Shown: positions 47,016 through 47,507 of the stretch, one piece after another | Layout: every line of letters begins with the position of its first letter | Numbering within the stretch: the first letter of the stretch is position 1 | NCBI RefSeq assembly: GCF_006345805.1 | Contig: NC_043003.1 | Location: 58,342,001-58,406,000 of the forward strand | Length of the DNA stretch: 64,000 nt | Source: Octopus sinensis | Lineage: Eukaryota | Direction: 5' to 3' | Notes under the pieces: model-generated | Told to the model about the DNA's origin: nothing | Databases searched by the model: none | What the model saw: only the letters and a program-made list of their open reading frames with translations | Position numbers and translations under genes: made by a program

Positions 47016-47507
47016 ATGAAGAAAATCACACGCAGACCAAGTAGACGGATTATCACCACGACTAAAAGCGCGGTGAGTGATACTAGTGAAAACAACCCTG
47101 AAACTGGCAAAACTACTCCCGGTTCAGAACAGAAAGCCTCGGAGAAGAAAACCCACGAGAAAAAAAGTCATGGGCCAAAAAACACCGAACAGAAAAGCTC
47201 TGACCCAAAAACTGCCGACCAGAAAAATTCTGATCCCAAACACCCGGAACCAAAAAACTCTGAGCAGCAAAAAGGCGCAGAACCAAAAAATTCCGAACAG
47301 AAAGTTCCCTCGCAACACAGAAAGGGTTCCGAAGTAAATGGCTTGAAGGATAATAACAATAAGGAACCACCTCCCGCGAAAACTCCCCAACAATGGGCGA
47401 CTTCCGAAACTTTGTTGTCGTTATGTCAGAAGAAAGATTGGTTGGGGACTGAGATGCGAATGAAGACGTTGGAAAGGGACCACAAGGAGGTGAACGAAGC
47501 AGATAAG
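47016..47507 (+). CDS. nompC: First coding exon of a probable NOMPC/TRPN-type ankyrin-repeat mechanosensitive TRP channel (N-terminal 164 aa; remaining exons not seen in window)
   Basis: ATG at 47016 with an in-frame stop upstream (TAA 46989-46991). 164 non-microsatellite codons end at a consensus donor AAG|GTGAGT (47507/47508, phase 0). Residues 129-154, [26 protein letters not shown], match the recalled Drosophila NOMPC pre-ankyrin segment TANKVLGLAMKSEWTPIEAELKKLEK (T, L, L, K, W, E, K, L, E conserved). The F/I-rich tail shown in the ORF track is intronic microsatellite. Confidence 0.65.

What the first reader, a model, noticed from the sequence alone, without database searches (positions are those of the whole stretch)
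47016..47507. Probable first exon of a cephalopod NOMPC/TRPN mechanotransduction channel
Seen: the only non-repeat ORF with protein-like composition, closed by a perfect AAG|GTGAGT donor. Its last ~35 residues ([32 protein letters not shown]) follow the L-x-L-x-x-K-x-[ED]-W-x-x-x-E-x-x-x-K-x-L-E pattern that I recall immediately before ankyrin repeat 1 of Drosophila NOMPC. Known: TRPN channels are force-gated through a long ankyrin spring and are absent from mammals. Inference: this is the 5' end of a large-intron TRPN gene, a candidate touch, sucker or statocyst mechanosensor.
Basis: partly seen in the sequence, partly recalled or inferred. Interest (0 to 1): 0.7.

Follow-up and report, generated by a model that had tools for sequence, protein, structure and literature searches.

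The report
First exon of octopus NOMPC/TRPN gene

Summary
ATG at 47016 opens 164 codons that end at AAG|GTGAGT (47507/47508), with an in-frame TAA 27 nt upstream.

An exhaustive HMMER search found one public protein whose residues 1-164 are 100% identical to the exon: CAI9725800.1. It is 1396 aa, from Octopus vulgaris assembly GCA_951406725.2, and its gene spans 203 kb.

Its best solved relative by far is Drosophila NOMPC (5VKQ, 1042 bits; ankyrin-1 408). The match is collinear through the ankyrin array, linker helices and S1. The non-ankyrin part matches NOMPC 1122-1329 at E 1.5e-60.

The exon tail matches the segment before ankyrin repeat 1 in arthropod TRPN (LSLCQKxxW). The phase-0 intron falls in the same alignment column as in Drosophila and as in an orthologous exon from a second, unidentified species.

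Only exon 1 lies in the window, so intron 1 is longer than 16.5 kb.

Caveats:
- The public model is named "PP6 regulatory ankyrin repeat subunit A-like".
- It lacks S2-S6, the pore and the TRP box.
- No RNA reads were checked here.

Cephalopod TRPN and octopus sucker NompC are already published. Verdict: correct, already known, low interest.

The parts
46989..46991 (+). In-frame TAA upstream of the start codon. It makes 47016 the first possible ATG in this frame.
   Evidence: Read directly from the sequence. The orthologous exon in L001 also has an in-frame TAA, 24 nt upstream of its ATG.
47016..47507 (+). First coding exon (164 codons, phase 0 at its 3' end) of the Octopus vulgaris TRPN/NOMPC gene.
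   Evidence: 100% identical to residues 1-164 of CAI9725800.1 (P0055). tblastn places only these residues in the window.
47016..47051 (+). Conserved basic N-terminal motif [12 protein letters not shown], including the start codon.
   Evidence: 8/12 identical to MKRNTRKPIRRI at the start of the orthologous exon P0057/L001.
47175..47306 (+). Degenerate decapeptide repeat (PKN[ST]EQK...-like, 30-nt period, about 5 copies). It lies inside the basic, low-complexity, probably disordered N-terminal tail (residues 1-123, pI 9.8).
   Evidence: TRF found a period-30 array at 47175-47263. Direct-repeat families D4 and D5 cover the same region. The region is absent or unalignable in the L001 orthologue, whose exon is 94 rather than 164 codons. 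AF2 pLDDT is below 50 for residues 101-117.
47385..47480 (+). Pre-ANK1 helix-turn-helix (residues 124-155, [32 protein letters not shown]). This is the TRPN-specific cap in front of ankyrin repeat 1.
   Evidence: HMMER aligns it to NOMPC residues about 80-104. It is the top arthropod-profile hit in the window. LSLCQK is shared with a beetle TRPN fragment. It is 22/40 identical to L001. AF2 predicts helices at 124-138 and 142-155 with pLDDT about 89-90.
47481..47507 (+). First half of the loop leading into ankyrin repeat 1 (HKEVNEADK). It resembles the ankyrin hairpin loop xxVNxxDxxGxTPL and is completed by exon 2 (ENGFTPL...).
   Evidence: Continuation seen in P0055; alignment A1.
47508..47513 (+). 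Splice donor GTGAGT of intron 1 (phase 0).
   Evidence: Read from the sequence. It falls in the same alignment column as the Drosophila nompC donor ...HDM|GTGAGT (L002; A1) and the L001 donor GAG|GTAAAA.
47514..64000 (+). 5' part of intron 1, longer than 16.5 kb. It contains a TCT/TCA microsatellite (47577-47871) and a SINE-like copy (48071-48187), and no further TRPN exon.
   Evidence: tblastn of P0055 against the window. A six-frame motif scan found no ankyrin motif. The gene range is 202,850 bp.

Best explanation
Window 47016-47507 (+) is the first coding exon of the single TRPN (NOMPC-type) channel gene of Octopus vulgaris. The gene spans about 203 kb, and only exon 1 and the start of intron 1 lie in the window.

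The exon supplies four things:
- the start codon and a short conserved basic motif ([12 protein letters not shown]);
- a lysine-rich, low-complexity tail of about 110 residues, probably disordered, which holds a lineage-specific decapeptide repeat;
- a conserved helix-turn-helix (residues 124-155) that caps ankyrin repeat 1;
- the first half of the loop into repeat 1, cut by an ancient phase-0 intron.

In the whole protein this is the far, cytoplasmic end of the long ankyrin 'spring'. By analogy with Drosophila NOMPC, four such springs are anchored to microtubules at this end, and compressing them pushes the linker/TRP domain to open the pore.

Shown here: exon identity, orthology to NOMPC, intron-position conservation, and the helical cap as an AF2 prediction.

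Inferred: disorder of the whole tail, microtubule anchoring by this end, and mechanical gating in octopus. The last two rest on published work on fly NOMPC and O. bimaculoides NompC.
For: Identity with a public protein:
- The exon equals residues 1-164 of CAI9725800.1 / UniRef100_A0AA36B0Q8, Octopus, 1396 aa.
- The gene is 202,850 bp on a 128.55-Mb chromosome of GCA_951406725.2, which is the O. vulgaris reference.

Orthology to NOMPC:
- 5VKQ scores E 0 and 1042 bits, collinear over 92-522, 481-569 and 550-1260 against NOMPC 39-1329, with the C-terminal tail 1328-1375 against 1668-1714. The next hit, ankyrin-1, scores 408 bits.
- The non-ankyrin part matches NOMPC 1122-1329 at E 1.5e-60. TRPC6 and TRPC3 follow at about 1e-4.
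- Pfam finds only ankyrin families, with 16 Ank_2 stretches.

The exon tail against TRPN:
- BLASTP: 13/43 identities.
- Arthropod profile: E 0.013, first of 1676 ORFs; 15.8 bits against a shuffle maximum of 10.6.
- The junction-spanning octopus segment retrieves a beetle NOMPC N-terminal fragment over 84% of its length.

Intron position: octopus ADK|GTGAGT, Drosophila HDM|GTGAGT and L001 VDE|GTAAAA share one alignment column.

Second-species orthologue: start 8/12 identical, tail 22/40 identical, middle not conserved.

AF2: helices at 124-138 and 142-155 with pLDDT about 89-90.

Literature:
- One TRPN per cephalopod species (PMC13402157).
- NompC in octopus sucker and hectocotylus sensory cells.
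- 29 ankyrin repeats, microtubule association and push-to-open gating (PMC8186909).
Against: No RNA reads or cDNA were examined, so the 47507 junction rests on an EVidenceModeler consensus model plus comparative evidence.

A word-index search with a junction-spanning peptide found no independent transcript-derived fragment.

The public model lacks the equivalent of NOMPC 1330-1667 (S2-S6, pore, TRP box). The channel part of this particular gene was therefore not seen here.

The exon alone gives no hit in Pfam, PDB or the word-index protein search.

PMC13402157 lists O. vulgaris TRPN as 'non-annotated' on OX597820.1. I could not confirm that this is the same chromosome as the 128.55-Mb record.
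Confidence: 0.93

Rival explanations
1. The exon is real, but the gene predictor attached it to the TRPN gene by mistake. It would belong to a separate upstream gene or be an orphan ORF, and the true TRPN first exon would lie elsewhere in the 203-kb range.
For: The annotation is an automatic consensus of transcripts, protein alignments and ab initio calls. The same model is demonstrably imperfect, since it lacks the pore region. No independent spliced fragment was found.
Against: The exon's own tail is homologous to the pre-ANK1 segment of arthropod TRPNs. It ends at the same intron position and phase as Drosophila nompC exon 1. The alignment with NOMPC runs without a break across the junction. 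A mis-joined foreign exon would not show these features.
Confidence: 0.03
2. The gene is what its database name says: a PP6 regulatory ankyrin-repeat subunit (ANKRD28/44/52-like), a soluble scaffold and not a channel.
For: The name given by NCBI/UniRef. Pfam sees only ankyrin families. The model has no pore domain.
Against: Residues about 1053-1260 match the NOMPC linker helices, pre-S1 and S1 at E 1.5e-60. The only other PDB hits to this part are TRPC channels. The whole-protein score to NOMPC is 2.5 times that to any ankyrin protein. The same PP6 name is carried by TRPNs of other animals in a curated phylogeny.
Confidence: 0.01
3. The ORF is a chance open frame in repeat-rich intergenic DNA, and its resemblance to NOMPC is coincidental.
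For: About 75% of the ORF is low-complexity and includes an internal tandem repeat. The window is full of microsatellite-derived ORFs. The exon alone has no Pfam or PDB hit.
Against: The start, tail and donor are conserved in a second species that is only 55% identical in the tail. The profile and shuffle tests are positive. The exon is included in an annotated protein that is collinear with NOMPC.
Confidence: 0.02

Closest known systems
Drosophila melanogaster NOMPC (TRPN1; PDB 5VKQ)
   Same: The architecture is collinear: a low-complexity N-terminal tail, a pre-ANK1 helix pair, a long ankyrin array, linker helices, pre-S1/S1 and the C-terminal tail motif (DW..[IV].[KQ]KY). The first coding exon ends at the same alignment column and phase, just before xxGxTPL of repeat 1.
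   Different: The tail is only about 30% identical. The loop between the cap and repeat 1 is about 10 residues shorter in octopus. The N-terminal tail is K/E/P/S/Q-rich with a decapeptide repeat, where the fly tail is G/R/S/D-rich. The octopus gene is about 203 kb with introns of many kb. The public octopus model lacks S2-S6 and the TRP box.
Cephalopod TRPN/NompC as already described (O. bimaculoides XP_052825426.1; O. vulgaris locus on OX597820.1; sucker mechanoreceptor NompC of van Giesen et al. 2020)
   Same: Same family, and for O. vulgaris almost certainly the same single-copy gene. The literature reports one TRPN per cephalopod species and expression in sucker and hectocotylus sensory cells.
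   Different: I could not fetch those sequences, so identity with the window's gene is inferred from single-copy status. PMC13402157 lists the O. vulgaris gene as 'non-annotated', whereas the record CAI9725800.1 does exist under a PP6-ankyrin name.
PP6 regulatory ankyrin repeat subunit A (ANKRD28 family), the name attached to the protein
   Same: A long uninterrupted run of ankyrin repeats.
   Different: The octopus protein carries TRP-channel linker helices and S1 homologous to NOMPC, as well as the TRPN-specific pre-ANK1 cap. The name is an automatic best-hit label.
TRPA1 (ankyrin-rich TRP channel)
   Same: N-terminal ankyrin repeats in front of a TRP channel core. It is picked up in PDB searches through the repeats (about 166 bits).
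   Different: The score is about six times lower than for NOMPC. TRPA1 gives no hit to the linker/S1 part at E up to 0.01, and it has far fewer repeats.

Membership tests
TRPN (NOMPC-type TRP channel) | A very long N-terminal ankyrin-repeat array (29 in NOMPC), collinear with NOMPC. | tested here: met
   P0055 residues about 165-1085 are ankyrin repeats (Pfam: 16 Ank_2 and 15 Ank stretches). They align collinearly to NOMPC 39-1120 with two short gaps. About 27-28 repeats fit by length; a crude motif count found 24.
TRPN (NOMPC-type TRP channel) | TRP-type linker helices, pre-S1 elbow and S1 following the ankyrin array. | tested here: met
   P0055 1053-1260 matches NOMPC 1122-1329 at E 1.5e-60. 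The only other hits are TRPC6 and TRPC3.
TRPN (NOMPC-type TRP channel) | S2-S6 transmembrane core with pore loop and TRP box. | tested here: inconclusive
   This part is absent from the public model. P0055 jumps from NOMPC 1329 to 1668. The genomic DNA beyond the window could not be fetched because the gene range is too long. PMC13402157 reports a conserved TRP box in cephalopod TRPNs, so the gap is most likely a gene-model defect.
TRPN (NOMPC-type TRP channel) | Closer to NOMPC than to any other ankyrin protein or TRP subfamily. | tested here: met
   Among solved structures, NOMPC scores 1042 bits, ankyrin-1 408 and TRPA1 about 166. This was tested only against PDB sequences, not against a full proteome phylogeny.
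TRPN (NOMPC-type TRP channel) | The family-specific pre-ANK1 segment (L.L..K.[ED]W...[ED]...K.[LM]E), encoded at the end of coding exon 1 with a phase-0 intron before xxGxTPL. | tested here: met
   This is my own operational criterion, derived from 13 arthropod fragments plus Drosophila. It is not a published definition.
TRPN (NOMPC-type TRP channel) | The window's ORF is part of that gene. | tested here: met
   164/164 identity to the N-terminus of P0055.
TRPN (NOMPC-type TRP channel) | Mechanically gated cation current; expression in mechanosensory cells. | not testable with these tools
   Literature only. NompC is reported in O. bimaculoides sucker mechanoreceptor cells and in the hectocotylus tip.
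PP6 regulatory ankyrin repeat subunit (ANKRD28/44/52) | A soluble all-ankyrin protein with no TRP linker and no transmembrane segment. | tested here: not met
   P0055 has the NOMPC-type linker helices and S1.

The most novel reading that the evidence does not exclude
The octopus-specific lysine-rich tail could be more than filler. With its roughly five PKN(S/T)EQK-type decapeptide repeats (residues 54-97), absent from the second-species orthologue, it might be a lineage-specific tether module. It could bind microtubules or another cytoskeletal partner and so tune the anchoring, and hence the sensitivity, of the TRPN spring in octopus suckers.

A weaker variant: the pore-less 1396-aa model might reflect a real ankyrin-only isoform rather than an annotation gap.
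Probability: 0.08. Interest if true: 0.45.

Novelty: already known. Interest (0 to 1): 0.15.

Why it matters
TRPN/NOMPC is the best-understood tethered, force-gated channel. It is absent from mammals, and in octopus it marks the mechanoreceptor cells of the suckers. Knowing the true 5' end of the O. vulgaris gene is useful for probe, CRISPR and expression-construct design, and for fixing the annotation.

Practical value of this check:
- It shows that the public O. vulgaris protein CAI9725800.1 is the TRPN gene, is misnamed as a PP6 ankyrin subunit, and lacks its pore exons.
- It shows that the first-intron position has been kept since the fly-cephalopod ancestor.

None of this changes what is known about the family.

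Tried and rejected
Searches that led nowhere:
- Pfam on the exon alone gave only noise, E 0.9 or worse.
- PDB phmmer on the exon and on its last 49 residues gave nothing at E up to 10.
- The word-index protein search on the exon gave nothing. I first read this as 'not in any annotated protein'. I then saw that the same tool does not return full-length NOMPC for a NOMPC fragment, only proteins of 300 aa or less, so the negative result was uninformative.
- A six-frame regex scan for ankyrin motifs in the window found none, so exon 2 is not here.
- The word-index search with a junction-spanning 177-aa peptide, meant to find transcript-derived fragments, found only generic ankyrin proteins and one beetle NOMPC fragment.
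- Rfam and tRNA scans of the window found nothing.

Look-ups that failed:
- The NOMPC cryo-EM paper is not held under the id I tried.
- No paper mentions sample ERR3431203, so the species of L001 stays unknown.
- I could not link the 128.55-Mb chromosome to OX597820.1.

Explanations rejected: PP6-ankyrin subunit identity, chance ORF, and a mis-joined exon (see rivals).

Full report
**1. The observation**

The sequence is as described.
- An ATG at 47016 sits in the context GCTATGA. An in-frame TAA lies at 46989-46991.
- The ATG opens 164 codons that end ...GAT AAG | GTGAGT. The last exon base is 47507 and the intron is phase 0.
- The mechanical ORF continues to 48002. It does so only through a TCT/TCA microsatellite (47577-47871), so ORF length alone proves nothing.
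- About three quarters of the peptide is basic and low-complexity. Residues 1-123 have pI 9.8 and 22 lysines.
- That region includes a degenerate decapeptide repeat of 30-nt period at 47175-47306.

The window is eukaryotic, AT-rich and packed with microsatellites and dispersed repeats.

**2. The recalled NOMPC motif is real**

- BLASTP aligns the exon tail to ...TANKVLGLAMKSEWTPIEAELKKLEKYV..., directly in front of ankyrin repeat 1. It gives 13/43 identities and 24.3 bits.
- A search with that NOMPC segment returned N-terminal TRPN fragments from many insects.
- These fragments share the same build: Met, a low-complexity tail, KPxSAG, then [IL]L.L..K[GS]EW..[VI][DE]..[LI]K.[LM]EK.
- The beetle fragment reads ILSLCQKGEW, against octopus [10 protein letters not shown].

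A 37-column HMM of 13 such segments gave two positive tests.
- It ranks the exon's ORF first among all 1676 six-frame ORFs of the window, at E 0.013 against 2.2 for the next.
- It scores the real tail 15.8 bits against a maximum of 10.6 in 5000 shuffles.

**3. The decisive result**

Pfam, PDB and the word-index protein search gave nothing for the exon alone. The word-index tool turned out not to return long proteins that contain a short query, so its negative result is uninformative.

The exhaustive HMMER search of 1.84 billion representatives found one strong hit.
- P0055 is 1396 aa and 100% identical over residues 1-164, at E 3.4e-95.
- It is CAI9725800.1 / UniRef100_A0AA36B0Q8 from Octopus.
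- It is encoded by a 202,850-bp gene on a 128.55-Mb chromosome of GCA_951406725.2. That assembly is the Octopus vulgaris reference genome.
- After ...KEVNEADK the protein continues ENGFTPLIIAANETKYIIAERLIDLGANINA....
- tblastn of P0055 against the window finds only residues 1-164. Intron 1 is therefore longer than 16.5 kb.

**4. The protein is TRPN**
- Against all PDB sequences the best hit is NOMPC: E 0 and 1042 bits.
- The alignment is collinear from query 92 to 1260 (NOMPC 39-1329). The C-terminal tail also matches (1328-1375 against 1668-1714).
- Ankyrin-1 follows at 408 bits and TRPA1 at about 166.
- The part after the ankyrin array matches NOMPC 1122-1329 (linker helices, pre-S1, S1) at E 1.5e-60. 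The only other hits to that part are TRPC6 and TRPC3, near 1e-4.

The database name, 'serine/threonine-protein phosphatase 6 regulatory ankyrin repeat subunit A-like', is therefore a misnomer. The same label sits on the TRPNs of Daphnia, lamprey, abalone and O. bimaculoides in a curated TRP phylogeny (PMC13402157).

The public model is incomplete. It has nothing matching NOMPC 1330-1667, which covers S2-S6, the pore and the TRP box. I could not fetch the rest of the locus, so the pore of this gene was not seen here. The literature reports a conserved TRP box in cephalopod TRPNs and one TRPN per species.

**5. Comparative support for the exon itself**

A second hit, P0057, is an ORF on a 3990-base Logan contig from sample ERR3431203 (L001). 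The species is unknown.
- It begins MKRNTRKPIRRI, 8/12 identical to the octopus start.
- Its middle is unrelated and shorter.
- It ends ...[34 protein letters not shown], 22/40 identical to the octopus tail.
- The DNA then reads GAG|GTAAAA at the homologous codon. An in-frame TAA lies 24 nt before its ATG.

In Drosophila genomic DNA the first coding exon of nompC ends ...GTT CAC GAC ATG|GTGAGT (L002). In a MAFFT alignment, octopus ADK|, L001 VDE| and fly HDM| fall in the same column, immediately before xxG[FM]TPL. The phase-0 intron in front of ankyrin repeat 1 is thus shared by fly and cephalopod.

**6. What the exon encodes and how it probably works**

AlphaFold2 was run on residues 101-291 with a 15-row alignment.
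- It predicts two helices at residues 124-138 and 142-155, with pLDDT about 89-90.
- A loop follows (156-169, which holds the exon junction), then the first ankyrin helices.
- Residues 101-117 have pLDDT below 50.

I read the exon as four parts: the start codon with a short conserved basic motif, a disordered lysine-rich tail, a helix-turn-helix cap on ankyrin repeat 1, and half of the hairpin-like loop (KEVNEADK|ENGFTPL resembles xxVNxxDxxGxTPL).

In fly NOMPC the 29-repeat array is associated with microtubules. Compressing it pushes the linker/TRP domain to open the pore (PMC8186909). Exon 1 would then encode the anchored, far end of the spring.

Two steps are inference. One is that the basic tail takes part in anchoring. 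The other is that the octopus channel is force-gated, which rests on published O. bimaculoides work cited.

**7. Novelty**

The gene is already in the public annotation. Cephalopod TRPNs have been catalogued (PMC13402157). Octopus NompC is an established marker of sucker and hectocotylus mechanosensory cells.

Small additions from this check:
- The link between CAI9725800.1 and TRPN. PMC13402157 lists the O. vulgaris gene as non-annotated.
- The defect in that gene model.
- The conserved intron position.
- The lineage-specific decapeptide repeat.

**Verdict:** The finding is already known, so interest is low.

Noticed in passing
Protein CAI9725800.1 (P0055), whose exon 1 is window 47016-47507: The public O. 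vulgaris gene model is named as a PP6 regulatory ankyrin subunit. It also lacks the equivalent of NOMPC 1330-1667 (S2-S6, pore, TRP box), plus two short stretches inside the ankyrin array. It is probably missing exons in a 203-kb gene.
   Followed up: partly
window 22407-23215, with 27 hits across the window (for example 18096-18595, 24866-25033, 27085-27387, 48071-48187, 61927-62221): A dispersed SINE-like element of about 168 nt, 75-100% identical between copies. It occurs once as 4.7 tandem copies, and one copy lies in TRPN intron 1. It gave no tRNA or Rfam match.
   Followed up: partly
window 26347-27400 and 27776-28825: A tandem duplication of about 1.05 kb at 99.4% identity. It carries identical 143-aa ORFs (26418-26849 and 27845-28276, minus strand) with no Pfam match.
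   Followed up: partly
window 42343-43224 (+): A broken mariner/Mos1-type transposase. The HTH_48 domain (42343-42825) and the partial DDE Transposase_1 domain (42862-43224) sit in separate ORFs.
   Followed up: partly
window 14805-15224 (+): A 139-aa ORF with a C2H2 zinc-finger match (zf-C2H2_4, E 2.3e-7). I did not resolve whether it is transposon-derived or a gene fragment.
   Followed up: no
window 47577-47871, and 8920-9691: A long TCT/TCA microsatellite starts 70 nt after the splice donor and keeps the exon's frame open for another 160 codons. This could mislead ORF-based gene callers. Separately, an (ATAC)n array of about 196 copies lies at 8920-9691.
   Followed up: no
window 32151-34058: A relatively GC-rich block of imperfect 27-129-nt minisatellites built from GTT/GCT/ATT-type triplets. 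It gives long spurious ORFs on both strands (up to 351 aa).
   Followed up: no
L001 2123-2404 (Logan contig ERR3431203_660289): An orthologous TRPN first exon from an unidentified second species, 94 codons long. It has the same start motif, tail and donor position, and it lacks the octopus decapeptide repeat.
   Followed up: partly
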